Origin: Macrostomum lignano
Lineage: Eukaryota
DNA: 29,701 bases
NCBI GenBank assembly: GCA_002269645.1
Contig: NIVC01004977.1
Span: forward strand, 1 to 29,701
Reading direction: 5' to 3'
A program made the position numbers and the translations under genes. The notes below the pieces were generated by a model. That model was not told where the DNA came from. It did no database searches and saw nothing but the letters and a program-made list of their open reading frames with translations. Of this stretch, positions 1,271-29,701 are shown piece by piece. Each line of letters starts with the position of its first letter. Positions within the stretch are counted from its first letter, which is position 1.

Positions 1271-1560
1271 GCCTACAATCCATTGGAGCGCCCTGATTGG
1301 CTGAGACCGCAGTCCCCCACACCAATCAATACTTTCCTACCCCAGCCCTAGCTGATACTAGAGTACAGAGGCTCCATTCGGCTAAAACCCCTCAGAGCTC
1401 CCTGATTGGCTGAGACTGCAGTCCTCCAAACCCAATCAATAATTTTCTACTCCAGCCCTAGCTGATACTAGAGTACAGTGGCTTCATTCGCCTACAACCC
1501 TCAGAGCTCCCTGATTGGCTGAAACTGCAGTCCACCAACCCCAATTCTTTCCTACCCCAG
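1271..1560. repeat. ~109-bp tandem repeat, about 2.6 copies
   Basis: ccctgattggctga recurs at 1291, 1400 and 1509, with conserved intervening sequence. Confidence 0.9.
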
Positions 1561-3152: not shown

Positions 3153-5429
<2,277 letters not shown>

Positions 5430-13135: not shown

Positions 13136-14773
13136 TAGACAGACAGACAGACAGACACATGTAAAGTCAATCTCCAAGACGCTCTCACCGAGTCCCCGCG
13201 CCCCCGGTTCTCTGCGGCAGCTTCCTCGCTGGTTTCTGCTGCCCCGGCACCTTCAATGTAGCCGCAGGCGCAACTTCTCGATGCTGCGAGGCTACACTGG
13301 ACCGTCGCGAGTTCGAATCCCCGGCCTGTTGCAGCTTTCTAGCTTCCAGTTCGCTATGATGCGGCCCAGGTTCTAGCCGGTACATCTTCTTGGTCAGAGT
13401 TGCCGGTGATGTCTCCGGCTCCGACCTGGTGGACTCTGACATCAGGGTGTCGATTTCCAGACCTCCAGTGGCGATCTGCTTGGAGTCTCGCCGGAGTCGC
13501 TGATGCTGGTCCATTGTGGGGGCCACGAATGCGCTCTGCGACCTCCTCAGTGGTGGGACGGGTGGCGGCGGCTGCGGAGCTGCCTGAGCTGCTGTTGAAG
13601 TGTCTGTTGCATGATGCATGAGAAAGAAAGGGAGAAGTAGACAGGAATAAATGGAGAAGTAGACTGGAACAAGGGGAGAAGTAGACTGGAACAAGGGGAG
13701 AAGTAGACTGGAACAAGGGGAGAAGTAGACAGGAACAAGGGGAGAAGTAGACTGGAACAAGCGGAGAAGTAGACAGGAACAAGGAAAGAAGTAGACTGGA
13801 ACAAGGGGAGAAGTAGACAGGAACAAGGGGAGAAGTAGACTGGAACAAGGGGAGAAGTAGACTGGAACAAGGGGGGAAGTAGACTGGAACAATTGGGGAG
13901 AAGTAGACTGGAACAAGGGGAAAAGTAGACAGGAACAAAGGGAGAAGTAGACAGGAACAAGGGGAGAAGTAGACTGGAACAATTGTGGAGAAGTAGACTG
14001 GAACAATTGGGGAAAAGTAGACAGGAACAAGAGAGAAGTAGACAGGAACAGAAAATCAATAGACTAGAAATTGAAGTGTGAAGAACATTCCAATCAAAAT
14101 AGGCGCATAAAAGGGATACTATAAGTCTATTCCAACGTAGTTAAGCTTACTTGTAACACATTTTACTGAACTTGTTGTTGTCTGAACCTTTCTAGGTGCT
14201 TGTTTTTCACGTTGCTGCGGTAGCTGCTGCTGCTGAGGCCTGTTCTCAGAGTCAGTCAGTTGCTCATCCTTGGTCTGTTGTGGCACCTGAGGCTTTTCTG
14301 TTTCTGGTGGTATTGCAGTTGAAGATGAGACATCCTTGACCGGCTGCCGTTTGACGACACTCGGCTTCGAAACGGTTCGTTTCTTTCTTCTCACAGGTCG
14401 ATGCTGCTTCGAGTTGGACTTGCTGGCAGCGCCTGACTTGGCCAGCCTCCTCTGCTGCTGCTGCTCGATTTCGTCCTCAAGCGAGTCTCTTTCCTCATCA
14501 TCATCTTCGTTTGCGCTGCTGTCTTGACGACTGTCAGCTTCAAGGACGTCGCCCTGGGTCTCTGCTGGCTCAGCTGACATCCTGACCAAATCTGTGAGTC
14601 TGGTGCGTTGCTGTCGCAGTCTGTCGGCGGAAATGACTGATTTCTCTCCACCACAACTGCTATAAGAATGATTTTTGCGCTGCCTCGGATGCGCTCACAG
14701 CCAGGCTCCCTGGGTCGCGTCAAGTCATACCTTCATCCCCGACCCGACCCTCAAGAGAAAATTGGAGAGGAAA
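7714..14773 (-). CDS. Uncharacterised multi-exon protein (>=770 aa, 5' end not resolved), low-complexity with a short ordered core
   Basis: Phase-compatible GT-AG exons 14773-14731 (tentative), 14591-14151, 13603-13189, 12921-12802, 9769-9430, 9350-9259, 8666-8586 and 8494-7714 total 2313 nt and read as one open frame ending RSKRQN*. Core: [42 protein letters not shown]. The family was not recognised. Confidence 0.75.
8690..9200. repeat. 23-bp minisatellite (gggtcattgggtcttttggttat) in intron 9258-8667
   Basis: Tandem units with deletion variants; it produces the WVIGSFGY ORFs. Confidence 0.92.
9820..10850. repeat. ~16-bp minisatellite (cattggttccatgggt) with higher-order variants, intronic
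   Basis: About 1 kb array mixing cattggttccatgggt, cactaattccattggat and cattggttctatgtgt units. Confidence 0.92.
10897..12014 (+). mobile_element. Non-autonomous piggyBac derivative (internally deleted transposase)
   Basis: Acidic N-terminus from ATG 11093 (frameshift and stop) fused to C-terminal piggyBac motifs [18 protein letters not shown] and NAWIVY, plus the Cys-rich RRCRQC..YVCSQC..LC..CF..WH. Degenerate inverted repeats at 10897-10926 and 11983-12014. No intact TTAA TSD. Confidence 0.85.
12156..12770 (-). mobile_element. Non-autonomous P-element-like DNA transposon carrying a THAP-domain remnant
   Basis: 32-bp TIRs (12156-12187 and 12739-12770, 29/32 match) with CATAG...CTATG termini. 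Flanking 8-mers gccaaaat / gcaacaat match 6/8. Internal peptide CCVRGC...[19 protein letters not shown] matches the THAP signature (C-x-V-x-C...FP...KW). Confidence 0.8.
12992..13157. repeat. (AGAC)n microsatellite, intronic
   Basis: About 40 units in intron 13188-12922. Confidence 0.95.
13625..14050. repeat. 22-bp minisatellite (gtagactggaacaaggggagaa), intronic
   Basis: About 19 copies within intron 14150-13604. Confidence 0.92.
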
Positions 14774-15117: not shown

Positions 15118-15482
<365 letters not shown>

Positions 15483-15918
15483 CACTCGAGACTCGGTAGA
15501 TTAAATGGAGCAGTCCTTTGAAGTGAAGCGCTCATAGATTCTATTTTGCAGAAGAGCGTAGAAGCACTGATAATTTGTGGCTGTAACAAAATTTTGGCTG
15601 CTTCTGGTGTAACGCGCCCAGAGCTTCAACTTTTATACACGTTCATGCATGTGTTTAAATCTGTGCACGCATCTGCGCTAGCTCGTAAAAGTAGATATAA
15701 GTTACAGCAGTGGAAGCCTCAGTCTTTTGGTAACACATCTGCCGTGTCTGCACACTTGTGCACTGCAGCACTTCACGGACTCCATCATGCTTAAGTCTTA
15801 CTCATCATTTCGTGAGATTCTATGATTCTGAGTCAGCTATAATTCACGAAACTGCCATTCTAATACTTGCATACTCAATGATACTTACATGCACAACAAC
15901 AACAACAACAACAACAAG

Positions 15919-17525
15919 ATCCTTGCTCGCACTCAAGATGCGCTCCAGAAGATCGAACAGTGGGCAGATCACCTGCGCATTGACCTTAATCCATCCAAGA
16001 CCGAGTGCTGCCTCTACACTGTCTACAGCCACTCGATCCCCTCCAAGAAAGAACTGAAGTTCCTCGGGGTGTGGATAGACCATGGCCTCCTTTTTGATAA
16101 GCACTCCAACGCAGTCAAAGAGAAGATGACACGCAGAACCGCCATCATCCGCGCGCTCGCCCATCGCGAATGGGGCTGGGACCGCGCCCTGCTCCTCCGG
16201 GTTTATCGAGCACTCGTCGAATCTGTGGTCTGGCACGCTGCTGCTGCCTGACTCCATGGCTGTCCAGTACCCGCCTCGACGACCTGGACCGCGCTCAAAG
16301 AGAATCCCTCAGAGCCATCACGGGATTGCCACGCTCGACACCGGTGGAAGCCATCTATATGGAAACCAACGTCAGCCCGATCAGCCTCGAAGCCCGCCGT
16401 AGGGCCCTGATGGCCTACGAGAAAGCAAACCGCCGACCGGCCGACGATCCGTTCCGGCAGATCTGTGACAGGCAACTCAACACCCGGCTAGCGGCCAACA
16501 AAGGGCTACGAGAGCAAGCCAGAGCCATCTGCAACGCTATGATCCCTCTCCCGCGTCTGCCTATACCTACGACCCGCAACCCCCATGGGACTCGCTGGTT
16601 GATTGCGGGGTGCAGATGTTCACCAAACTCCCCGAGCATGAAGGATCTGCGACCGAGGCAGTGCTCTCCGCGATTGAGCAGCGTTGTCCCGATGCAGCCC
16701 TCTACTTCACTGACGGTTCGGTCTCAGGAGGCACCACCAACGGGGGATCGGCCTGGATCCTCCTCCGCAAAGAAGACGGCATTATCATCCGCAGAGGGCA
16801 CGCGGCAGCAGGCCGATGGTGCAATTCCTACGAGGCCGAGCTAAATGCCATCACTCTCGCGCTCCAGGACATCATCGATTCCGCTCCCGCCTGCGCCGCC
16901 ATCCTCACGGACAGTCAAAGTGCCATTACCGCCATCCAAGCCGACCGGCCCACACTGAACGCGAGGCTCGAACTAGCGAAGGCCCTCCTCGTGACTGCGG
17001 CCCATAGGACCAAACTTACGCTGCTCTGGGTGCCCGGGCATTCGGGGGTGCACGGCAATGAACTCGTCGACACAGAAGCTAAAGTCGCAGCGACTCTCTG
17101 TCAAGGTCAGGTGCTCATCTCGCTCCCCCGCCTCCAAGGAGCGGATCTACCATCACCTTAGGTATCAGCCCGACCTGCCAGGACACCTGGAGGTATACCG
17201 CACCCCGGTGTCCCCAGGAACGGGCACTCGTCGGCAGCGGACGCTTATATCCCAAGTCAGATCCGGCCATTGTCCAGAATCATCCTACTATCGTCACCGA
17301 ACAGGCATCGCCGAAGGAGGGCCATGCCGGCTATGCAATCAACCGACTGAGCAGTTCCATATTCTCCATTGTCCTAAGCTCGAACCTACTAGACGCACCA
17401 TCGGCGTCACTAGCATTGGTGACCTTGCACGAGGAGAAGTAGTGGCGCAGCTCCTGGGGGCCATCGACTGGCGGCCCCTCTGAGCTCATCTCCGCAAACA
17501 ACAACAACAAAAACAACAACAACAA
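15919..17525 (+). mobile_element. 5'-truncated, frameshifted non-LTR retrotransposon (I/Nimb/Ingi-like): RT C-terminus, RNase H, Cys/His knuckle, (CAA)n tail
   Basis: LNPSKTE..KFLGVWID..WGW; ITGLPRSTPVEAIYMETNV; RNase H YFTDGS..EAEL..ILTDSQS..WVPGHSGVHGNELVD; CRLCNQPTEQFHILHCP. Stop at 17481-17483, then a CAA-rich tail. At least 3 frameshifts. Confidence 0.9.
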
Positions 17526-17539
17526 GACACGCTGTCAAA

Positions 17540-17940
17540 GATGTTGTTAGAAGGTAGCATCACAGAGCGCGCCTCTCGGACAGGTCGGGAACGAAAGCTG
17601 CGCCGCCGACCGAATCCGGAACGCCAGCGTCAGCCGACATACGAAATGCCGAGTGCGCGCCTGTCCCCGCCGATAGGGTGCCTGCACCTCCGGCACGGGA
17701 TGTGGGCAGTACGACTCGGCGCGTATGATGTGTGTGACCTGGCAGCCGGAGTCCCTGAAAGCACAACAGATCACTTGGGCGGACCAAGGCCAGGGCGGCG
17801 ATACAGTGCTGAGTTTGAAACATCTCAAGCGTCTTCTTGTGGCTCGAGCGAGTCCGTCAGCGTCTAGGTCTCAGCGTTGTACAGCAAGACGGTCTCCACC
17901 ACCGCCTGGAATAGTTCCGCCCTCGGGCCTCGGAGGTAGG
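17540..17940 (-). mobile_element. 3' fragment of an RTE-like non-LTR retrotransposon
   Basis: Minus-strand peptide RAELFQAVVETVLLYNAET*TLTDSLE...HIIRAESYCP is typical of the post-RT region of RTE-clade elements. It is nearly identical to 28487-28540. Confidence 0.7.
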
Positions 17941-19131
17941 ACCTCGGATTGCAGGACTGGCTTCACAGAACAAAAGTCAGTCGAGGCAATGACTGTGATT
18001 AAAGATTTTACTCCTCTCGCTCCTCTATATTTATACTAATTTAAGCGGCTCCCTACTGGAGGGCGCCTAGTCCAATAAAATCTAGTAAAGTATAGTAAAA
18101 AAGTCTAGTAATCTAGCATAGTAAAAAAATACATATACATAACTACAGAATTACAGAATTCCACAATATGACGCTGTTGTGAACACTACGGCCAATACCA
18201 AAAGTCAGGATCAACTTTGTGCGTAACTAACTGAAAAAAGTGAGTATACTCGTAGTCATACAAAATCCTTGAAATTCAGATAGCATCGGAAATATTTTAA
18301 CACTCACATGCATTGATTCATAAAGTGCATACCAATAAGAGTAACCTATGTAACTCCAAAATACTAAATATCAGTAGGAATACCAAGCCATTTTCCACCC
18401 GTCGAACTACCCGGCCCTGACAATTTTTTCTGTGCCGGAACGGAGCAAAGCAGGCACACGAAATGCAAACAGACGAGTGAACTTTTGTTGTGCACATTCT
18501 CAAACAATATAAAATAGGATTTTTCCCATAAGCGCAGTGATTTAATACACCCCTGTGCTTCAATCAGCACTGTGCCTCAGTGCAGCCTTGCCAAGCCTCA
18601 AGGTGTAAAAGTTAGCCCGTGTTCATGAATCTCGTGTGCCTTGCTTTCCTCCGTTCCGGCGCAGCAAAAAGATTGTCTGAGGGATTCCTCTCTGATACGA
18701 GCGTGTTACGGATCTGTACGATTTTTATTTTAGAAAGGAAACGGCTCCATCGAGAATCACCAAACTAAAAATTTTCAGGATTTGTTACATATGCTTTTTA
18801 AGCTATTCATATAATGCAGATTGCTCAATGCTGCACAGTGAATATAACTGGGCATAGCACTGCATTGCCTTGAACGGAATATCTAAAATTGCCCAGACTT
18901 AACAAGAATCGATTTGATTTAACAATGCCTTTGAAATAAAAAGCTGGGGTTTTCAGAGCCAATGCTTTCCTGCTTTAAACATATATCGAAGAGAAATTTA
19001 CAATTGTGACAACTCCAAAGGTATACATAGGTAGGTACTGAAAAATTTTGGGAATTGAAATCGTCTGACAAGGATAAAAAATCTCTGTATTGTAAAACGA
19101 CCTGAGCGTGTCTCATTTTACTTGACGATCA

Positions 19132-22100
19132 CTAGTCAGTAGCCTCACCAGCTTGGACTCTAGTGGCCTCACCAGCTTGTACTCCACCAGCCTCACCAGC
19201 TTGTACTCCAGTGGCCTCGCCAGCTTGGTCTCCAGAGGCCTCACCAGCTTGTACTCCAGTGGCCTCACTAGCTTGTATCCCAGTGGCCTCACCAGCTTGG
19301 ACTCCAGTGGCCTCACTAGCTTGTACTCCAGTGGCCTCGCCAGCTTGTACTCCAGTGGCCTCACTAGCTTGTACTCCAGTGGCCTCACTAACTTGTACTC
19401 CAGTGGCCTCGCCAGCTTGTACTCCAGTGGCCTCGCCAGCTTGTACTACAGTGGCCTCGCCAGCTTGTACTACAGTGGCCTCGCCAGCTTGTACTCCAGT
19501 GGCCTCACCAGCTTGTACTCCAGTGGCCTTGCCAGCTTGTACTCCAGTGGCCTCGCCAGCTTGTACTCTAGTGGCCTCGCCAGCTTGGTCTCCAGTAGCT
19601 TCACCAGCTTGTATTACAGTGGCCTCACTAGCTTGGACTCCAGCAGCCTCACCAGATTGTACTCCAGTAGCCTCACCAGCTCGAACTCCATTGGAGAAAA
19701 CGGCCCACGTCTCCTCAGCGAACTCCGCTGCCAGGTGCGCCACATCGTACGCCGTCTTTCGGCACACTCCGCCTCCCGACCAATCAGATTTGAGCTGCTG
19801 ATTGAGCTCTTTCACCAGGATCTCAGTCGAGTGCTTCTCGTTGTTAACCAGGTAGACCCAGCGGACAATCCAGCTGTCCTCACTTGATAGAATTCTGTGC
19901 TCACGACTCACCATGAAGTTGAATATGTCTCTGGTGTCTCTCGATTGGTGAAAGTTTTTACGAGTATCCTTATCAATTCGCTTTGATTCTTCTAGCAGGC
20001 ATTTTTGCACGTTTTCAAGCGTTACAGTATCGTTCTTGAGCAGCTTCATCAGCGACTCGAGCTCGAATGCCTTCCGCTCTGTCTCGGAACTAAGCTGGTT
20101 GAACTGCCTTTTATAGTCGCCTCCAAGCTGCTTCTTAAACTGGCCAAACGCGTGAGGATATGAGAACTCTCGACCCGATCCCTTAAGCCGAACTGCCAGC
20201 GACCGATCGAGGACTTCCTTCGCCTCTTTCAGCACCGAGACGATCATGTTGTTCATTTCTTGAACTTCTCTACCAGTCTCCTTCATCTGCAGCTTCGTCA
20301 TGAGAAATCGATTCGATCTCATGAGGTTTCCGCGATCGCCGGCGCCTTCAGCTGACCGAGTCGAGCCCGCTTTGCTCGTTAGCAGATTGAGCTCCAAGAA
20401 CTCAGCGATTCTGAGCTTTCCAGACTTCTTTAAATCGTCCAAATCCGATTCAGTTTCAATAAAGAAGCTGTTGGAATCATCTATAGTGAGTTCGATCTTG
20501 GTGCACAGCTCGTACAACTCTCGGCGGAAGAACAGCGGGTCTTTTCCAGCTTGAGCTGATGGTGACGCATCCGCCATCACCCTTTCGGCAGTTTTCTGTT
20601 CGGACTTTCGACGCTCGAGAATTTCGAGAATTTGAGGAGCCGCATCGCGACATCCGCACTCGAGGCACTCCTGAAAATGTTTTAGATCAGCCTCGGGATT
20701 CTCTAGAAGTGACTGAGCCAGCAGTTTGTTTTTACTTTCATGCTCATCTGGAAGCTTCCTAAAACAGTCTACTGCGGCATCGAAGTTTCTGTTCTTCATT
20801 AGAAAGCGACCAAGGTGCTCCAGAGCGAACTCATTACCTTCATCTCGTTCTAATGCGGTTCTGTAAAGCGATTCGATGTCCAGCTTCTTCCTAAATGTGC
20901 CAAACAGAGAAGCAAACCATGCCAAGTACTCTTCTCTGCCTTCTTTTAAACGAAAAAGATCCTCAAAGAAGGCCTGTTTCTTTGCGTAAAACACCATTTC
21001 TAAACTGGACTGGGCCTCTACAGCAGCGATGCACGACTCTATAGCTTCGTCCGTATCACCCTGCTTCATCAAATACAAAGCCTTGCTAAACAGAATAACT
21101 GCCACATCTTTGTTATACATTGAAAATATCTGACGAAGTTAGTCGAAGTGAGCTACAGATTTATCTTTGCCTAAACTTTCGCTCTGCAGTTCCAGAAGTT
21201 TCAGCTCGATCCAAAGATTACCAGGTGCAGCTGCGACTTCTTGGCCTTTTTTTAGCAGTTGCATTGCTTCATCTGTACTCCCGATTTCGCAGGCTGCACC
21301 CGCCATCTCCAAGTAAAATCCGGAGTCGCTTATTGAAAAGTCAGAACTTTTTACATCGTCCAGTAGAGCCTTTTTTTGCTGGTCAAAACTTTCTTTTGTT
21401 CGCCAATTCAGATGCCGAAATATTTTTGCGCACACAACGTACATGAATAACGAATGCTCTTTGAAGCTCTTCGGGCTTTGCAGAAACATGTTGGTAGCTT
21501 TTTCAACGAGCTGGCAACACAATTCGTGGTTTACATTGTGAAGAATTGCTTCTGCATAGTTGGCATAAAAAATGGAGGTTGTGAGATTCTTCTTCTCCCC
21601 AATCTCTCTGGCGGTGCGCCACAGCTCCAACAATTCACTGTCGGCCTGCTTTTTTGCCGTCTGCCTGTTGCACCGAGCCTTTAAAAATGCCTCACCATAA
21701 AGCCAATAAAAGTTTTCTGGTTGTATTTCTTTGGCCTTGGAAAAAGCCTCAACACCAATAGCATACTTTTTGGGTCCGAAACAGTCAAAAGTGACGCCTT
21801 TGACGCCGAAGACTTGAGCTCGTTTGTTAGAGTCATTCCACAGACTGCTGAGCTCGCGAAGTTCCTGTGCAAGTGAGTCCTCTTCACGCTTCTGGAACTT
21901 TTTACTTGTATTTCCGCGCATCTTTTTGAGGTGCAATATGTCAGCTCTGATAACATACTCGCTGGATACGTGCAGGTCAGTCTGATTGTCTGACTGAATT
22001 TGAGCATCAATGCGTCGCGCCTCATCCAGGAGTTCTTGCGCTCTGACGAAATCCACGCGCGTCTTTTGGGTATGTAGGTATGCCAGCGTAGTGAGGTAGG

Positions 22101-22233
22101 CGACCTTCTTGTGAGGCTCTCTTTTGATCTTTCGTTCTGTGGTCTTGATCACGTCTTCGATGTTGACTTTTGTACTTTCCTCGTCAGGACGCCAAGTAAA
22201 GTGACACTCCAGCTGGTCCAAGGACTCAACCAT
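19132..22233 (-). CDS. IFIT-like tetratricopeptide-repeat protein with C-terminal extension; single 1034-codon frame interrupted by one TAA (21139-21141)
   Basis: N-terminal SLDQLECHFTW is the IFIT CHFTW signature. FSKAKEIQPENFYWLYGEAFLKAR aligns without gaps to human IFIT1 FEKVLEVDPENPESSAGYAISAYR (recalled sequence). Further TPR-like helices follow. ORFs 21139..22233 and 19132..21120 are in the same frame (GAC TAA CTT CGT CAG ATA TTT TCA ATG). Confidence 0.8.
19135..19686 (-). repeat. 24-bp coding minisatellite, 23 copies, encoding VQAGEATG
   Basis: Unit gtacaagctggcgaggccactgga on the minus strand, with no indels; the ORF stops immediately after the last copy. Confidence 0.93.
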
Positions 22234-22247
22234 CGTAGCAGCGGACC

Positions 22248-22256
22248 CTGTGAAAC
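22248..22256 (-). promoter_or_regulatory. Candidate 3' splice (or trans-splice) acceptor 14 nt upstream of the IFIT-like ATG
   Basis: tttcacag| followed by GGTCCGCTGCTACG ATG, preceded by an AT-rich intron-like tract. Confidence 0.4.
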
Positions 22257-23799
22257 TTTTGGGTACAAAATTTGCTTTCAGTCGTCTAAGTAAGTTAAAG
22301 AAAATGTTTTTTTATTGTCCTGTATTGAAATATATGTTAGATTTATATTATCACTGAAAACATGCCAAATACCGAAGGGCGAAGGCGCACTTAATCGCAA
22401 ACCTACGAGCGTAGTACGAGGAGAGTCAGCACTACTTGCAATGCGAGTGTCTCGCTTCTCTTTACTCCAAGGCCTTTCTCTAACTGCGTCTTTTAAGCAA
22501 AAAAGATGAAGAATACGAGCTAGTTGAACACTTATGGGGGCAGATAGTGCGCACAAAATGCATCTTAAAAGCTGTGTCGGTTTTACAGTGCTGCCCTATG
22601 CATTGTTTGAGTTCAATTTGTTGTGTACTCTCTGCTTGCTTATGTGGTTCAGAGCAATTTTAGTGTTTGTGTACATAAATTTACAGGGACTGTTACAGTG
22701 ACAGGCGACAGCAAGCGCAAACACTCCAACCGCATACAATATTAATCATTGTTTTCTAAGAGCTGATCTAAAGTACATGTTCTCAGAATCAAAGCACGCA
22801 GGAAAGCTTGCTTTCGCCCGTTCTGTGCGTTCTGCGCGTCCATGCCTGATAAGGCTCAAGACTTCGTTGAGCATCCCTCGATGCGCGTAGAGTGTGCATA
22901 TGTCGTCGTAGACCTGAACACTGTCCTGCGTAGGTTTGAGCGGTCTCTGTTCGAGACGCGCATAAGAACGGAAACTTCCTGGAGGACTTCTCATGGACCT
23001 CTCCAGACTCTCCTGAAGAGGCAGGACATGGTGTCGGTCAACACCCGTTTTCGCAAGCCACCGGGAGGACTTTCAACTATGTGTGCTGCAAGCGAAGACG
23101 GCAAGAATGCGCGTGGCCGAAAAGCAACACAGAGGCAAACAGAACTCAAACATGTGCTTGTGCGCTTTTGGGAGCGCCGCCGCGCCGTTAACTGCCGAGT
23201 CCATCACGCGCGCTGACTCCTCGTCTCTCGGAGGCCTCAAATTCAATAACTCGATAGAAATATACTGTATAATAGCAGCCGGCAATAACACAGCTCTCAA
23301 TAATCGAATAACAAAGATTTGACCAAGGCTTACCGATCGATATAAGCTTCTCTCAGAGATTTAGCTCTCGTTCATGTTAGTTTGTCTCGAGTTCTCTTGA
23401 GGCTGCTTCGAGGCTGCTACGGTATGGATTTCAGCTCAGATTTTTCGCTTATATTTATACCCGTTTTGAGTCGACCTTGAGCTCAAACCGTTTTTTGATG
23501 AGTTTACGAAAGGACTTTATTTGACAGATGAGATTTTCGAAAAGAAGCAGTGAAACTTAGGTCAATTTAAGGTTAACGTTTACATTTTTTGCGAGTTCTA
23601 AAATTAAATGTTGCGAACCGGTTTTTCGCATAATGAAATTGTAATTCACTGTTTTCGTGATAATACTAACGCATGCAAGGTGGGTTCAGCACGCCTGTGT
23701 AGCATGAGACAGACCAGTCTGCGATCCTACACACCTGCACCCCTATATTCTGGTGCAGGAATATGTACGGTGCTGAAAAACCTGTTTATCTACATGGAG

Positions 23800-26700
23800 G
23801 ACGAGCGACCCCAGACACACCGGCACCGTGCCTGGATTTCGGCTCGCAGCTGCATCACCAAGGCCGACGAGCTGCGTCACCTGCTAGTGGCTACCAACCC
23901 GGCGCTACCGGCAAACGGTGTCGTAGTTCACAAGACCATCTCCAAGCCGGACGGAGATGGTTTCACGGCTATTCTAGGACTGTCGGATAGCTGGATGCTC
24001 CGCTATCCGGACATGTCCCTCATCTCTGTCGGGCTGATGCAGATTCAGCTCTTTAGCTTTGAGTCTGACGCCACCCGTCCACCGCCCCCGGAGAAGCGTA
24101 AGCGGGCGAGCGGGCACCGCCCGCGGAGAAGCGTAAGCGAGCGAGCGGGCACCGCCCGCGGAGAAGCGTAAGCGAGCGAGCGGGGGCTCTGCCGGGCGGA
24201 AACGCCCAGGAAAAGAAGCTCCCGGTCGTCACGACCCCTCCGAGGACGTGGACCCTGTCAGAGGGAAAGCCGCGAAAGCTGCAGCAACAGGCGGACGTGG
24301 AAAGGGCCGGAAACCCACCCGGAACACTATCCGCTCTGGTCTGACTCAGCGCGCGAAGCAGCTGCTGGACACCGCCAGGGCCCACAACCGCAGCAACCCC
24401 CAGCCCAATGTCACCACTGCCCCCCAGAAAACCGGGCTGAGAGCGAGAATGCCGCCCAGGTGGAGGCATCGCCCTCGACCATGGAGACCATCCGGAAGGA
24501 GCCCATGGAACTGGAGCCTGGAGCTATCGGCGAGGCAGAAGAGGTGGCTCTCCTGCACAACTCGCCCTGAGCCGGCAGGAAGCTGCGCGGACCACTCGTG
24601 GATTCCCCGGAGTGGACATCCTGCAGCTAAACCTACACCACTGCATCGCGGCCTCGACCAACCTGATGCGGGTGGCAAACTTTGCGAAACCGGGCATCAT
24701 CCTACTCCAGGAGCCCTGGACAAAGAAAGGTAAGATTCTGAATATTCCTGCTGGTTTTGACTGTTTTCAAGACCACCAAAACCCCAGAGCAGCCATGTTC
24801 GTGTCTACCCATCTCAAAGCTTGGCACAGACCGGACCTCTCTGACAGAGATCTCTGTGTGATTCAATTCAACCATATTATCACCAACCGCACGGTCATCA
24901 TCGCCTCGATCTATATCCCTGGCGATGGCCCCGCGGTTCCACCCAACCTCATCTCCCTCGTGGACTACTGCTCTAACTGTAGGTTCGAGCTGCTGGTGGC
25001 GGGCGACGTCAACGCTCACCACACCACTGGGGCAATAATACTTCCAACAGCAGAGGCGAGGAACTCCTTGCTTACATCTGCACCACCAATACTGAGTTTT
25101 GCAACATTGGTGGAACCCCCACCTTTGACAACGGGCGATGGACGGAGGCCCTCGACGTTACCCTCGTCTCCCATGGCTTGACTCCTTTAGTCAAGGACTG
25201 GGAGGTTTGGGACGAATAGGAATCTCTGTCTGACCATCGCTTCGTTCGTTTCCGATTGCAATCCTCTTGCCCCAAGCCTCACATCCTGTGGAAAAGGAAC
25301 GTCCGGAACACTGACTGGACGGCTTTCACGGAAACCCTGAAACGCCAGACAGATCAGCTGTTTACCGCCGCTCCAACCATCTGTCAGGAAGTGGATGACC
25401 TTGCAGACTTGCTCAGCAAGACCGTCCTGACAGCCCATGAGGCTTCCTGTCCTCTTAAAGCCTACAAAGGCACAATATCCGCCCCCTGTTTGCACCCGGC
25501 GCTTGGATCCCTCCGGCGCAAGGTAAAGCTTCCAACCGTAAGCTCGCAAGAGCAAGGACCCAGCTGACCTGGCCGCCTACCAAGAAGCGATCCGCGACTT
25601 TAAGCGTGAAACCAGGAAAGCCAAGTCCGACAAATGGCGCCAATACTGCGCGGAGTTAGAAGGCACCCGTCCTACTTCGCGCGTAGTTAAGGCTCTCACT
25701 CTTGACAAAATGTAAAAGCTCTCAGTTATTAAAAGACCGGACGGCCGGCTCGCTGAGAACCCTGGGGAATCGCTGGACATCATGCTCACCAGCTCTTTCC
25801 CACGTGCCGCACAGCAGCTAGGCCCACCGGACCACTCTCCGGGCGGACAGATCCTGGCTTCGACCATCATTACTAGAGAGAGGACGGCTCGCGCCGCAAA
25901 ATACTTCTCTCCTTTCAAGTCACCAGGATCTGACAACATTTATCCTGCCTTCCTCCATGAGGCAGTTATAAATGACAGGTTTCTCGGCCTCCTCTGCAAC
26001 CTCTTCAAGGCCAGCATTACCCTGGGTACGTGCCAAAAGCCTGGCAAGAGGCTACGGTAGTCTTCATACCCAAGCCAGGGAAGGGAGACTGATGGAACGG
26101 CTGGTGCTCTGGCGCCTTCTCCTCGTAGAGCTGAGGAACTCCCCGCTCTCCCTAACCAGCACGCCTTTCGTTCTGGACGCTCCATCGAAAGTGCGCTGCA
26201 CGCCATTGTCGACAAGCTGGAGCACGCCGTGCTTGGCAATGGATACGCGCTCTCGCTTTTCCTCGACATTGATGATGCTTTCAATAATGTGCTCTTTGAA
26301 GTCTTTAAGCGGGCCCTGGAATCCCGGGGCACGCACGAGCACCTCACTCGCTGGATCATGTACATGGTCTCCCATCGTACTGCCACCTCGCGCCTCCTGG
26401 GACACTCGCGCTCCGTGGAAGTCCAGAAAGGCGGACCGCAAGTCCTAAGCCCGAAGCCCGATCCTCTCCTAAGCCCGATCCTCTGGAATATAGTCATGGA
26501 CGAGCTGCTTTGCAGCCCGCATCCGGACCCAGTTTAGAAGGTCGGCTATGCGGATGATGTTACCGCCACTGTGGCTGGACCATCACCCGCGGTCCTCAGG
26601 GACTCCTTCAAGCCTTCATCCACCGTGCCGAACGCTGGGCACACAGCTGCGGTCTCAGGTTCTCTGAGTCTAAAACCGTGGCTATCATGTTCACCAGCCG

Positions 26701-27533
26701 CCGAAACTGGAGGATCGAACCGCTCTCCCTCTATGGCAAACCTGTTGCCATGGAGAAACAAACCAGATGTCTGGGCGTCACCCTCGACCACAGCTAAGCT
26801 GGACCCCGCACGTCCAAACCAAAGCCCGCAAAGCCTCGCGACTCTCGCGCAGATCCGCAGAGCTTTCGGCGCTACCTGGGGCCTCACCCCCGCCGCCTCT
26901 GGTGGATTTACACTGCCATTGTTAGACCGGCCATCTCCTTCGCCGGCTTCATTTGGAACAGTGCCTAGTGAAAGGGGTTCTTTAGGTTCTAAATAGGGTG
27001 CAAGGCCGCGCTTGTCGAGCTATCATGAGCGCGGCTCCCTCTGCGCCCTTCGCTGGCATGAACTCCTTCTTGGACATTCCCCCTCGACCTACCTCTTTGT
27101 TGGGTGTCCAAATCCAGAAGCAGTTTGCCTTCAGAAAGCGGAATTTCCGGCCGCATGGCGACCTCAGCCTGCGAGACCTGGAAGAAGCGAGAGGCATTCC
27201 ACCACGTCATGAAGCAAGAGACAACTGGAAACCCCATGAAATCCACTGCTTCACTGACGGGTCCCAAATCAACTCCGCCTCTGGCTACGGCTACTGCATC
27301 GTGTCTGGAGGGAGAACTATGGCGACCTTCTCCCAACACACCGGCACCTGCTCCACCGTCTTCCAGAACGAAGTTCTCGCCATTAGCTCCTGCGCCATGG
27401 AGCTGTACAATCAGCGCGTCTGGGGAAGGAAATTACCCTCCAATCAGACAGCCAAGCGGCGATTCACGCCCTTGAGCGCAGCACCACCTGCTCGCGTACA
27501 GTCCTCGACTGTATCGGGCAGCTCAACCGCTTA
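23800..27533 (+). mobile_element. Decayed LOA/R1-group non-LTR retrotransposon: ORF1 remnant, then APE endonuclease, RT and RNase H; 3' end missing
   Basis: APE: ILQLNLHHC, LLQEPW, GDVNAHH. RT: PGSDNIYP, VFIPKPG, HAFRSGRS, FLDIDDAF, LSPILWNIVMDELL, GYADDV (26547). RNase H: CFTDGS..VFQNEVLAI. ORF1 has a DUF4780-like stretch (tentative). Many frameshifts and stops. The 5' boundary is approximate. Confidence 0.9.
24082..24185 (+). repeat. 35-bp triplication inside LOA ORF1
   Basis: ccgcccgcggagaagcgtaagcgagcgagcgggca x3. Confidence 0.9.
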
Positions 27534-27940
27534 GGCACAACATATCTTTTGATATTTGTGCCTTTCTTATTGTTCTATCGATATTCATAAAGCTTTTTGT
27601 TCAGAAAATTAGGATTCCATGTTAATTTTTTATTCTACGTATATTTGTGCACGTCTAGTGCCTAAAAACCATTAAAATGGCACAGCTTGGCTCTTTGATT
27701 TTATGAGTCTATTTCATCATTCTTAGCTGACTGTGTAACAAATATGCGTAGCAAAAATGATAAAATGGATTCATAAACCAAAGATTTGGAGCTGTACAAT
27801 GCATTATTATTTTTTTAGGTACAGGAAACGTACGTAAAATAAAAATTAAATTTGAATCCTAATTTTTGAACGAAAGTTTACAAATATCGATAGAGCAATA
27901 AGAAGGCACAACATATCAAAAGATGAGCTTGGATCTGCCT
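27534..27940. mobile_element. AT-rich foldback element / MITE (~400 bp imperfect palindrome)
   Basis: 27547-27630 is the reverse complement of ~27840-27925, and weaker symmetry continues to a centre near 27735. GGCA...TGCC ends. No clear TSD. Confidence 0.75.
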
Positions 27941-28269
27941 CCTATCAAGCAAAAGCAATTTTGTGCTGAAAAAATGAAAATTCTATCTCCGTAGTGTATT
28001 TTTCCGGGAAAACCGCCTTCTAAATTTTTCTAAGAAACAAGGTTTCCCGTCTTTTCGTCCTTGTTTTGATCGCGTGACATTAAAAATTTTGGTTGTGCAA
28101 ATTTTTATCTTACTGCTTCTAGTAGTCTGCTTGCACTGTATTTCGAAGATCTCTACACCGCCACTGTTAACGCGCCACCACCCCGCTGCCAGACAATCCC
28201 AACTTCCGCCAGAGACGCCGTTGTCGGAAGAGGAAAATTAATTTTAGCGTTGCACCAGCCGTGCACTGC

Positions 28270-28620
28270 CTGCTAGAGCACATCGAGGCTGAAATTTAGT
28301 GCGGAGGCAGTCGACGGAGATTCTGCGTTGCCAGTAGTTTATCTACCTCAGCGGTCTGGTTTCTGGCTTACGCGTGGATCTTAGCGTCGCCGTGGGCGTG
28401 TCTTGGCTGCCTTTCGTTCTGTGAGGGGAAGCCCTGCAGTCTGAGGCCCTGTCTGACTGCCCTGGCACTGTTTCAAGCAGTGATCGAGACCGTCCTGCTG
28501 TACAACGCTGAGACCTGGACGTTGACGGACTCACTCGACCAACAAGTAGACGCGGCACAGCTGGTCTGCTGCGCGAAATATTCAAGATCGGCTACGAGCG
28601 ATGGACCAACGTGGCACTTC
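28270..28620 (+). mobile_element. Second RTE-like retrotransposon fragment
   Basis: FIYL..RRRGRVLAAF..LFQAVIETVLLYNAETWTLTDSLDQQVDAA; same family as 17540-17940. Confidence 0.7.
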
Positions 28621-29475
28621 TATCTATACGCGAGTCTGTAGGCTGTCGTGCGTCGTACGCTCGAGCAGCCTAGTCCCGACGGACACCGCGTTGTACGCGT
28701 GTCAGTGGAGGACCGCAGCCAGGGTCAGTACGCAAACCCGGGTCTGGGAAAGGGGCACGAAAGGACCAAGCCCTTGAGCCCCATCACCAAAATTATTTAA
28801 AAATTAGGCGACTTCTTTTCAACAAAATGTTTCTAGTGAAAGTTTTTAGGAAATGAGGTTTCACTATTCATTTACTCCTTAAGTAATAAAGTCCTTGTGA
28901 ATAATATGGAATTGTGAGTCATCGCAATGGTGCTTTTTGACGTACTTTTACGAGCGTATTCTAAACAACGATACTAACAATAGACAACATTGCCTGTAAA
29001 AGATTTGATATCGCTTAAAATTAGCTTAAATTTCAGAGAGATAAATGATAAGAAGCGTTACCATTAAAATTAATCTTCAGAGCTTCAGCTACATTTCCAG
29101 GAAAATTACAGTGGGAAACGTACACAGAACAGTTGGAAAAATGAGTTAGTGAAGTACAGGTTGGATAAGAAAGGCTGGCGCCAACAAAAGCTCACTGCAC
29201 AGTGCGCATCGACTTTCTCAGTAAATGCAGAAAGAAAGCTGCGAGCACAGTACACAGACAATTTCTGCCCTGCCAGACGAAACACCAACAAGAATGGCCA
29301 CCGCCGTTGTTCACTCACAAGTACGAGCGTACGTCTATTTTTAGCTGCAGACGCATAAACAAATTTATCCACTACGTACGTACATTAAAGTTGAGTAAAA
29401 GTTAAAGCTCTGGATTCAATTGCACCAAAAGCAGCAGCGACAGTTTTTGTTCCAGCCGCATCAAATCAGTGATTC

Positions 29476-29701
29476 CATATAGAATCTAATTTCACATGGA
29501 CGCTTCACTTCAAAGGACTGCCTCCATTTAATCTGCCGAGTCTGAATGCCACTTTCTATGGCAACCAGAGAAGTCGAGCACAAAAACCAACATCGACCAG
29601 GTGATTGAACGATTGCTGGAGTACAGGCTGTCAGACTCTGAGATGTCAGTTGTCTACCTGACCACCCTTAGCTACCTATCAACTCTGCCACCGTTTCCGA
29701 A
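29476..29701 (+). CDS. N-terminus of a second IFIT-like paralog, cut by the window end and apparently disrupted upstream of the CHFxW motif
   Basis: From 29544: ECHFLWQPEKSSTKTNIDQVIERLLEYRLSDSEMSVVYLTTLSYLST, versus ECHFTWRPDEESTKVNIEDVIKTTERKIKREPHKKVAYLTTLAYLHT in the first gene. In-frame TAA at 29529; an adjacent frame (29476-29544) reads ...FNLPSL. Confidence 0.75.

What the first reader, a model, noticed from the sequence alone, without database searches (positions are those of the whole stretch)
29476..29701. Hidden second IFIT-like paralog, head-to-head with the first: a gene cluster
Seen: a plus-strand peptide not in the ORF track aligns without gaps to the first gene's N-terminus (ECHFxWxP...STKxNIxxVI...YLTTLxYL). 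It is diverged enough to be an old duplicate. It starts ~7.3 kb from the first ATG in the opposite orientation. Upstream there is either a TAA (29529) or a -1 frameshift from ...FNLPSL, and that upstream frame holds a second FTW-like motif (ESNFTW). Inference: a lineage-specific expanded IFIT-like family, reminiscent of the clustered vertebrate IFIT locus.
Basis: partly seen in the sequence, partly recalled or inferred. Interest (0 to 1): 0.75.

Follow-up and report, generated by a model that had tools for sequence, protein, structure and literature searches.

The report
Second IFIT-like gene at window edge
The last 200 bases of the window are the true start of an unannotated second copy of a flatworm gene related to vertebrate antiviral IFIT proteins, although this copy's first few codons are damaged.

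Summary
Frame +3 of 29544-29684 matches codons 9-55 of the minus-strand gene (ATG 22233) without gaps: 22/47 identical, and it is the only other hit in the window. A family N-terminus profile built without either gene scores it 53.5 bits.

A 98%-identical copy of this locus in the Macrostomum lignano assembly (L007) runs 2.5 kb past the window end. There the gene continues for about 874 codons, is intronless, and is 35% identical to gene 1 over its full length. It is absent from that locus's gene list.

The family is IFIT-like. Its profile hits human IFIT5 at E=2e-16, colinear from the CHFTW motif. A confident structure model's top 13 fold matches are all IFIT5 or IFIT1. The family adds a ~450-residue C-terminal domain with no known relative.

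- The true start is ATG 29496.
- "ESNFTW" is a chance motif.
- This copy has a +1 and a -1 indel that create TAA 29529.
- Gene 1 here carries a nonsense codon.
- A third, truncated copy lies at 15482-15635.

Function is inferred only.

The parts
29396..29495 (+). Upstream flank and probable 5' UTR of gene 2, shared with the third copy. It begins with a TATA-like TAAAAG.
   Evidence: 29396-29559 matches 15635-15473 (minus) at 72%, E=2e-16. Local alignment score is 102 against 17.9 +/- 2.4 for shuffles. The promoter role is inferred only.
29496..29543 (+). Start codon (29496-29498) and N-terminal leader of gene 2, damaged in this copy. There is an extra C at 29521/29522 and a missing G at the 29543/29544 junction. 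Between them the frame is shifted and TAA 29529-29531 is read.
   Evidence: In four-way alignment A3, L007 gene 2, L007 gene 3 and the window's relic 3 all read M(D/S)ASLQRTA(P/S)FNLPSLEC in one frame. Only the window's gene 2 has the two indels. The intact frame restores the family's L-x-x-L-E-C pattern.
29544..29701 (+). Conserved N-terminal coding region of gene 2: CHFLW loop and the first helices. It is open to the window end and continues beyond it.
   Evidence: In L007 the same sequence continues for about 874 codons.
19132..22233 (-). Gene 1, the IFIT-like paralog: 1033 codons, intronless. It has an in-frame TAA at 21139-21141 (codon 365) and a C-terminal 8-residue tandem repeat, GEATGVQA, at about 19135-19700.
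   Evidence: It is 96% identical to M. lignano Mlig031348g1 (P0044), which has Ser (TCA) at the stop position and 9 repeat units instead of about 24.
15482..15635 (-). Relic third copy (gene 3): about 100 nt of upstream flank, ATG 15535-15533, and 18 codons (MSASLQRTAPFNLPSLEC).
   Evidence: In L007 the same copy still holds codons 1-163 (96%) and 674-782 (85%) of gene 2.
15118..15481 (-). (TCTA)n microsatellite that cuts off the relic copy. The same microsatellite follows the stop codon of gene 2 in L007.
24441..27531 (+). Degenerate non-LTR retrotransposon (endonuclease and reverse transcriptase matches) filling much of the 7.3 kb between the two gene starts.
   Evidence: Pfam Exo_endo_phos (weak) and RVT_1 on ORFs there. 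It is present in both copies of the locus.

Best explanation
Positions 29396-29701 hold the upstream flank, start codon and first ~68 codons of an unannotated, intronless gene of about 874 codons (gene 2). It runs off the right end of the window.

Gene 2 is an old paralog of the neighbouring minus-strand gene 1: 35% protein identity over the full length. The two are transcribed divergently, 7.3 kb apart, with a decayed LINE element between them. A third, internally deleted duplicate of gene 2 lies 3.6 kb downstream of gene 1's stop codon. The window therefore shows a small birth-and-death cluster. The organism is Macrostomum lignano or a very close relative.

The proteins belong to an invertebrate family with two parts. 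The N-terminal ~400 residues are homologous to vertebrate IFIT proteins: a TPR clamp that starts with the L-x-x-L-E-C-H-F-(T/N/L)-W latch loop. A conserved ~450-residue C-terminal domain follows, ending ...RE(H/Y)xI..W...W...KH...YDVAHxAAEFAE, with no detectable relative.

The stretch visible in the window encodes helix 1, the CHFLW loop and the next helices. In IFITs this is the element that packs subdomain I onto subdomain II.

In this copy of the locus the leader carries a +1 and a -1 single-base indel that expose a TAA, and gene 1 carries a TCA-to-TAA nonsense change. The most likely reading is that this copy is decaying while the sister copy is largely intact.

Shown: existence, extent, paralogy, orientation, the lesions, and IFIT homology of the N-terminal domain. 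Inferred: RNA-related or defence function, promoter, and expression.
For: Match and its significance.

Extension in a 97.9%-identical locus. It gives 476 open codons from the ATG, then a frame change at a G6 run, then 400 more codons.

Paralogy: 34.6% identity over 864 residues to gene 1, E=2e-141. Gene 2 is equally distant from P0001 (34.0%). Over the 47 aligned N-terminal residues, gene 1 and P0001 share 32/47, against 22/47 and 21/47 for gene 2.

Lesions.

Third copy.

IFIT homology:
- phmmer of gene 1 against 1.84 billion proteins returns shark, ray and teleost IFIT5-like/IFIT1-like proteins at E=7.5e-13 to 4.5e-4.
- The family profile hits IFIT5 at E=2e-16 in one colinear stretch, 9-398 against 13-367, and IFIT1 at 3e-10.
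- The AlphaFold model has pLDDT 93.9. Its top 13 Foldseek PDB hits are all IFIT5/IFIT1, E=3e-6 to 5e-5, TM up to 0.61.
- Gene 2's own N-terminal 475 residues hit only IFIT5 significantly, E=0.0058.
- CHFTW is reported as invariant in IFITs (PMC11462223).

Link to RNA: two family members carry an N-terminal RRM domain.
Against: Nothing beyond codon ~68 of gene 2 can be seen in the window itself. The extension rests on a sister copy that is 2% diverged.

That sister copy has its own frameshift, at a G6 homopolymer. No copy examined is shown to be intact end to end.

The two indels in the window sit in 2-base runs and could be assembly errors.

No expression data were available.

IFIT5's main RNA-contact lysine K150 aligns with Cys in gene 1 and Phe in gene 2. 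IFIT-like RNA 5'-end binding is therefore not supported residue by residue.

No ISRE-like element lies upstream.
Confidence: 0.85

Rival explanations
1. Gene 2 in this window is intact, and the two single-base indels (and possibly gene 1's TAA) are assembly or consensus errors.
For: Both indels are length changes in 2-base runs: GCC against GC, and TGGA against TGA. They are 21 nt apart and cancel each other. The rest of the visible frame is open. The sister assembly also shows a homopolymer-type frameshift.
Against: Gene 1 has 1033 codons in this assembly without one frameshift, so the indel error rate looks low. Gene 1's lesion is a substitution, not an indel. dN/dS between the two gene 1 copies is 0.64, which fits relaxed constraint.
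Confidence: 0.33
2. The start of gene 2 is supplied by splicing. One route is spliced-leader trans-splicing, since the M. lignano leader ends in ATG. The acceptor would be the AG at 29539-29540, giving M-S-E-C-H-F... in frame and making the damaged leader irrelevant.
For: The M. lignano spliced leader ends ...TTGCATG, and about 30% of its genes are trans-spliced (PMC8629364). The AG at 29539-40 is followed by the codon boundary of the ECHF frame.
Against: The site reads CCGAG, not the enriched YTNCAG acceptor motif. All three other copies keep one continuous ATG-to-ECHF frame. The leader is better conserved than the flank: 49/55 alignment columns match, against 72/115. That argues the leader is translated.
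Confidence: 0.05
3. The family is an ordinary TPR family. Its resemblance to IFITs is generic TPR similarity plus a convergent short motif, not homology.
For: TPR proteins cross-match easily. Designed consensus TPR proteins also score highly against the profile. Pfam gives only weak TPR hits. Liu et al. 2013 rejected invertebrate TPR proteins as IFIT relatives.
Against: The IFIT5 match is a single colinear stretch of about 390 positions starting at the shared LECHFTW, whereas other natural TPR proteins match about 120 positions at E>=3e-7. Apart from two marginal repeat proteins (P0033, P0037, E>3e-4), every hit among 1.84 billion proteins that was examined belongs to this family or is a CHFTW-bearing IFIT or IFIT-like protein. 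IFITs fill the top 13 fold matches.
Confidence: 0.1
4. The match is a short fragment carried by a transposon, or a chance similarity.
For: The surroundings are rich in LINE fragments and microsatellites. The flank 29396-29543 is repeated at 15.5 kb.
Against: The repeat at 15.5 kb is itself a truncated copy of the gene. The sister locus shows a full-length gene. Profile E=9e-16.
Confidence: 0.01

Closest known systems
Vertebrate IFIT proteins (human IFIT5, IFIT1; PDB 3zgq, 4hot, 5udi, 6c6k)
   Same: N-terminal L-x-x-L-x-C-H-F-T-W motif at the same position. Colinear similarity over about 390 residues. All-helical TPR clamp fold. Paralogs sit next to each other in the genome.
   Different: Twice the length, with a conserved ~450-residue C-terminal domain that has no relative in PDB or Pfam. 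Intronless, rather than a tiny first exon plus one large exon. No ISRE-like element upstream. IFIT5 K150 is not conserved. The host is a flatworm with no known interferon. Gene 2 has CHFLW, not CHFTW.
Macrostomum lignano hypothetical proteins BOX15_Mlig031348g1 (P0044; UniRef name 'DUF1722 domain-containing') and BOX15_Mlig030191g2 (P0001)
   Same: Same family and architecture. P0044 is the sister copy of gene 1 (96% identity). P0001 is a 47%-identical paralog.
   Different: Gene 2 is only 34-35% identical to either. No gene model covers it in the sister locus, and no protein like it appeared among the hits from the protein collections searched.
Short CHFTW-bearing TPR proteins of other invertebrates, e.g. 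RefSeq 'IFIT5-like' of the hemichordate Ptychodera flava (P0036) and UniRef T1JLK3 (P0022)
   Same: Same N-terminal motif and TPR region; found with the gene 1 query at E=8e-9 to 5e-4.
   Different: IFIT-sized or shorter (237-441 residues) and without the C-terminal AEFAE domain. Names come from automatic annotation only.
Generic TPR scaffolds (O-GlcNAc transferase TPR domain, APC/C subunits, designed consensus TPR)
   Same: TPR helical repeats.
   Different: They match only short parts of the profile, lack the N-terminal latch motif, and rank below all IFIT structures.

Membership tests
IFIT family (vertebrate) | CHFTW pentapeptide in the loop between the first two helices, reported as invariant in IFITs (PMC11462223) | tested here: met
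   Gene 1 has LECHFTW, seven of seven residues as in the IFIT5 chain aligned. Gene 2 has LECHFLW in the sister copy and ECHFLW in the window, so four of the five motif residues. Other family members have CHF(N/K/R/T)W.
IFIT family (vertebrate) | TPR clamp fold colinear with IFIT1/IFIT5 | tested here: met
   Profile against PDB: IFIT5 E=2e-16 over 9-398 against 13-367. Model pLDDT 93.9. Foldseek top 13 hits are IFIT5/IFIT1, TM up to 0.61. Gene 2 N-terminal 475 residues: IFIT5 E=0.0058.
IFIT family (vertebrate) | Conserved residues of the RNA 5'-end pocket (IFIT5 T37, Q41, K150, R186, Y250, R253; PMC9677429) | tested here: not met
   From the HMMER alignments: K150 aligns with Cys in gene 1 and Phe in gene 2; Q41 with Lys or Tyr; T37 is kept in gene 1 only; R186 is kept in both. 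Positions 250-260 align too poorly to judge. This is a sequence alignment only, not a structural superposition.
IFIT family (vertebrate) | Protein of about 430-500 residues made of TPRs only | tested here: not met
   Gene 1 has 1033 codons and gene 2 about 874. The added C-terminal domain has no PDB or Pfam relative apart from one weak DUF1722 hit.
IFIT family (vertebrate) | Two-exon gene whose first exon holds only the 5' UTR, ATG and two bases (Liu et al. 2013) | tested here: not met
   ATG and coding sequence are contiguous in gene 1, gene 2 and the M. lignano homologs.
IFIT family (vertebrate) | Interferon inducibility through ISRE elements within about 200 bp upstream | tested here: not met
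   No GAAANNGAAA on either strand upstream of gene 1, gene 2 or relic 3; the only two matches in the window are at 14295 and 14770. Induction itself cannot be tested here.
IFIT family (vertebrate) | Paralogs arranged in a local gene cluster | tested here: met
   Two full-length paralogs and one fragment lie within about 17 kb. Six related loci elsewhere show one gene per 20 kb.
Invertebrate long IFIT-like family (uncharacterised; M. lignano P0001/P0044 and metagenome-assembly relatives) | N-terminal L..LECHF.W.PE..STK...VI...; central ..CFGP.. motif; C-terminal RE(H/Y)xI..W...W...KH...Y(D/E)VAHxAAEFAE | tested here: met
   The gene 2 fragment scores 53.5 bits on the N-terminal profile. The sister-copy gene 2 carries RFFGP, MANRERRIL..W..W..EKH and YELANLAAEFAEETW. 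Full-length identity is 24-35% to family members.

The most novel reading that the evidence does not exclude
The IFIT module (CHFTW latch plus TPR clamp) predates vertebrates and interferon. In flatworms it is fused to a new conserved C-terminal domain, and in some paralogs to an RRM. Together these form an interferon-independent, RNA-directed defence family that turns over by local duplication and decay, as seen in this cluster.
Probability: 0.3. Interest if true: 0.8.

Novelty: new variant of a known kind. Interest (0 to 1): 0.55.

Why it matters
The published view in the literature I could search is that IFIT genes arose in jawed vertebrates (Liu et al. 2013, PMC3688568) and have not been reported from lower animals (PMC11462223).

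Here a flatworm carries clustered genes whose N-terminal 400 residues are IFIT homologs by sequence, profile and predicted fold. They include the signature CHFTW motif and are joined to an unknown C-terminal domain. Relatives with the same motif appear in a hemichordate and in other invertebrate-derived sequences.

If these proteins act on RNA or in defence, they give a tractable model for what IFIT-type proteins did before interferon existed, because M. lignano is transgenic-capable.

For annotation, a full-length family member has no gene model in the public M. lignano assembly at this locus.

Tried and rejected
- Single-sequence searches of the 5.8-billion-protein index with gene 1 and with gene 2 returned nothing. 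The first was a false negative: the same index holds a 96%-identical protein, found only with an alignment query. I therefore do not rely. The case that gene 2 is unannotated rests.
- Exact look-ups of the window's own ORFs found no contig.
- A metagenome scan for the gene 2 peptide found nothing.
- A single-sequence AlphaFold model was too poor to use (pLDDT 48).
- An intron across gene 1's TAA was rejected. The only in-frame option is 27 nt, and the sister copy simply has TCA there.
- A reassigned TAA codon was rejected for the same reason.
- Similarity between the gene 1 5' UTR and the gene 2/3 flank is not above shuffles (19 against 17.7).
- The repeat at 15.5 kb first looked like a transposon end with a microsatellite tail. 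It proved to be a truncated gene copy.
- The C-terminal domain profile found no PDB relative.
- tRNA and Rfam scans of the window were empty.
- Literature searches for invertebrate IFIT homologs and for the M. lignano gene identifiers found nothing relevant.

Full report
**What is in the sequence.** The window is animal DNA. It holds long microsatellites, decayed LINE fragments and a fibrinogen-domain ORF.

It has 1033 codons in one frame, with a single in-frame TAA at 21139-21141.

At the right edge, frame +3 reads ...FHMDASLQRTASI*SAESECHFLWQPEKSSTKTNIDQVIERLLEYRLSDSEMSVVYLTTLSYLSTLPPFP. It was not in the ORF list because ORFs that run off the window are not listed.

**Is the match real?**
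- BLASTP of the peptide against gene 1 gives 22/47 identities without gaps.
- tblastn of all of gene 1 against the window finds this place and no other, E=1e-8.
- I built a profile from the N-termini of 20 relatives from other sources, leaving out both window genes. Among all six-frame open stretches of the window it scores gene 1 at 91 bits, the stretch 29532-29699 at 53.5 bits (E=9e-16), and nothing else above 7 bits.
- Between the two genes the 47 codons have dN 0.54 and dS about 1.9, a ratio of 0.28. That indicates an old duplicate that diverged under constraint.

**Finding relatives.**
- A first search of the word-indexed protein collection found nothing.
- An exhaustive phmmer search of 1.84 billion representatives found 37 proteins.
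- The best, P0001 (47% identity, 1062 residues), is a hypothetical protein of the flatworm Macrostomum lignano.
- Others are ORFs on eukaryote-like contigs in two ENA metagenome assemblies. Several distant paralogs come from each sample.
- All share L..LECHF(N/T/K)W.PE..STK at the N-terminus. The long forms end with a conserved RE(H/Y)xI..W...W...KH...YDVAHxAAEFAE block.
- The same hit list holds real vertebrate IFITs: IFIT5-like proteins of a stingray (E=7.5e-13), a shark and a smelt, and an IFIT1-like protein of milkfish. It also holds an 'IFIT5-like' protein of the hemichordate Ptychodera flava.

**Is it IFIT-like?**
- A profile of 20 family members searched against all PDB sequences hits human IFIT5 at E=2e-16. 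The match is one colinear stretch, profile 9-398 against residues 13-367, starting at LECHFTW. IFIT1 scores 3e-10.
- The best other natural TPR protein (OGT) matches about 120 positions at 3e-7. Designed consensus TPR proteins score through many short repeats.
- With that alignment AlphaFold gives a confident model: pLDDT 93.9, pTM 0.91.
- Foldseek's top 13 PDB matches are all IFIT5 or IFIT1.
- CHFTW is described as invariant in IFITs and as the loop that contacts helix 7 of the second subdomain (PMC11462223).

The label is therefore supported for the N-terminal ~400 residues. It is not a plain family member:
- The proteins are twice as long.
- The genes are intronless.
- No ISRE-like site lies upstream.
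- IFIT5's strongest RNA contact, K150 (PMC9677429), aligns with Cys in gene 1 and Phe in gene 2, although R186 is kept.
- The C-terminal domain has no PDB relative. Its only Pfam hit is weak, to DUF1722, in gene 1.

**Extending the window.** An alignment query to the indexed collection returned P0044, M. lignano BOX15_Mlig031348g1, 96% identical to gene 1. Its locus, L007 (GCA_002269645.1, NIVC01000347.1), aligns with window 19473-29701 at 97.9% over 10.3 kb and reaches 2.5 kb beyond the window's right end.

The window is therefore M. lignano or a very close relative. L007 is an allelic, homeologous or sibling copy of the same locus. The two copies also differ by transposon insertions.

In L007 gene 2 starts at an ATG that corresponds to window 29496. 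It reads MDASLQRTAPFNLPSLECHFLWQPEK... for 476 codons. The frame then changes at a G6 run, where one more G would restore EHLGGFYLKEHKYQLAFDCF, parallel to gene 1's EHLGRFLMKNRNFDAAVDCF. It then runs 400 more codons to a stop, followed directly by (TCTA)n.

The conceptual 874-residue protein has these properties:
- It is 34.6% identical to gene 1 over 864 residues and 34.0% identical to P0001.
- It carries the C-terminal AEFAE block.
- Its N-terminal part hits IFIT5 as the only significant PDB match and shows weak TPR hits in Pfam.
- No gene is called there in L007, and none of the 37 library hits resembles it closely.

'Hidden' is therefore apt.

**The 5' end.** A four-way alignment shows that the window's gene 2 differs from L007's gene 2 in the leader by two changes. 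There is one extra C (CTGC[C]TCC, 29521/22) and one missing G (TCT[G]GAATGC, at 29543/44). Between them the frame is shifted and TAA 29529 appears.

The other three copies all keep one frame from ATG to LEC: L007 gene 2, L007 gene 3 and the window's relic. That frame supplies the two leucines of the family's L-x-x-L-E-C pattern.

The frame holding FNLPSL has no ATG of its own. ESNFTW (29482-29499) overlaps the true ATG and is missing from the third copy, so it is a chance motif.

**The third copy.** Positions 29396-29549 also match 15635-15483 on the minus strand: E=2e-16, alignment score 102 against 18 for shuffles. There an ATG (15535) opens MSASLQRTAPFNLPSLEC, which runs straight into about 360 nt of (TCTA)n.

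In L007 the same copy still has codons 1-163 (96% identical to gene 2) joined to codons 674-782 (85%), then (TCTA)n. It is a recent duplicate of gene 2 that has lost its middle, and in the window nearly everything.

The 54-nt leader is better conserved between the copies than the 100-nt flank: 49 matches in 55 alignment columns against 72 in 115.

**State of this copy of the locus.** Gene 1's TAA aligns with Ser (TCA) in P0044 and with Ser in P0001. Between the two gene 1 copies dS is 0.023, dN 0.015 and the ratio 0.64.

With the damaged leader of gene 2, my reading is that the window holds a decaying copy of the cluster. Assembly error is the main alternative for the two indels. I cannot decide between them without reads.

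**Function.** This is inference. The fold and the latch motif argue for an IFIT-type clamp. Two family members carry an RRM domain in front of the IFIT-like region; one is shown to be from M. lignano, and the other's source was not looked up. That points to RNA. Against it, the IFIT5 pocket residues are not conserved, so the ligand is open. No expression or induction data could be reached.

**Cluster.** The two full-length genes are head to head, 7.26 kb between their ATGs, about 3 kb of which is a decayed LINE present in both copies. The fragment lies downstream of gene 1. Six other family loci (one in M. lignano, five in the metagenome assemblies) show a single gene within 10 kb on each side. 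Clustering is therefore a local feature here, not a rule of the family.

**Novelty.** In the literature I could search, IFITs are said to start with jawed vertebrates and to be unreported in lower animals. Nothing was found on invertebrate homologs or on these gene identifiers. Automatic RefSeq naming does already call a hemichordate relative 'IFIT5-like'. I rate this a new variant of a known kind. The finding is solid but of moderate interest until function is tested.

Noticed in passing
window 21139-21141 (minus strand, codon 365 of gene 1): In-frame TAA splits an otherwise uninterrupted 1033-codon gene. The 96%-identical sister copy (P0044) has TCA (Ser) there, and P0001 also has Ser.
   Followed up: yes
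window about 19135-19700 (minus strand): The C-terminus of gene 1 is a 24-nt (8-residue, GEATGVQA) tandem repeat with about 24 units. The sister copy has 9, so copy number varies.
   Followed up: partly
L007 about 1300-1320 (minus strand): Gene 2 in the public M. lignano assembly changes frame at a G6 homopolymer. One extra G restores a frame parallel to gene 1. This may explain why no gene is annotated there.
   Followed up: partly
window 15916-17507, and L007 13186-17534: The two copies of the locus differ by insertions. A LINE piece (RT C-terminus plus RNase H) is present only in the window. A 4.3-kb element with an integrase gene is present only in L007.
   Followed up: partly
window 3156-4787 (minus strand): One open reading frame joins a long Thr-rich, mucin-like repeat to a fibrinogen C-terminal domain (Pfam E=2e-33). 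It may be a fibrinogen-related lectin-type gene.
   Followed up: partly
window 17616-17947 (+), 22877-23143 (-), 28315-28554 (-): These stretches match parts of a 4203-residue M. lignano gene model (P0040, named 'AMP deaminase') that also contains the P0001 sequence. The pieces contain stop codons and lie next to or over LINE fragments. My reading, not tested, is that the model fuses repeat-derived sequence to the IFIT-like gene.
   Followed up: partly
proteins P0011 and P0016: Family members with an RRM domain fused in front of a degenerate IFIT-like region (motif AESPFKW in place of ECHFTW). P0011 is from M. lignano; P0016's source was not looked up.
   Followed up: partly
C-terminal ~190 residues of the family (gene 1 residues about 660-850; alignment A4): A conserved block, (V/I)L(K/R)(E/D)..LD(R/S), YPHAF, RE(H/Y)xI..W...W...KH and YDVAHxAAEFAE, has no PDB relative by profile search. 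Its fold and role are unknown.
   Followed up: partly
(tool behaviour): The single-sequence mode of the indexed protein search missed a 96%-identical protein that the alignment mode found. Negative results from that mode should be treated with care.
   Followed up: yes
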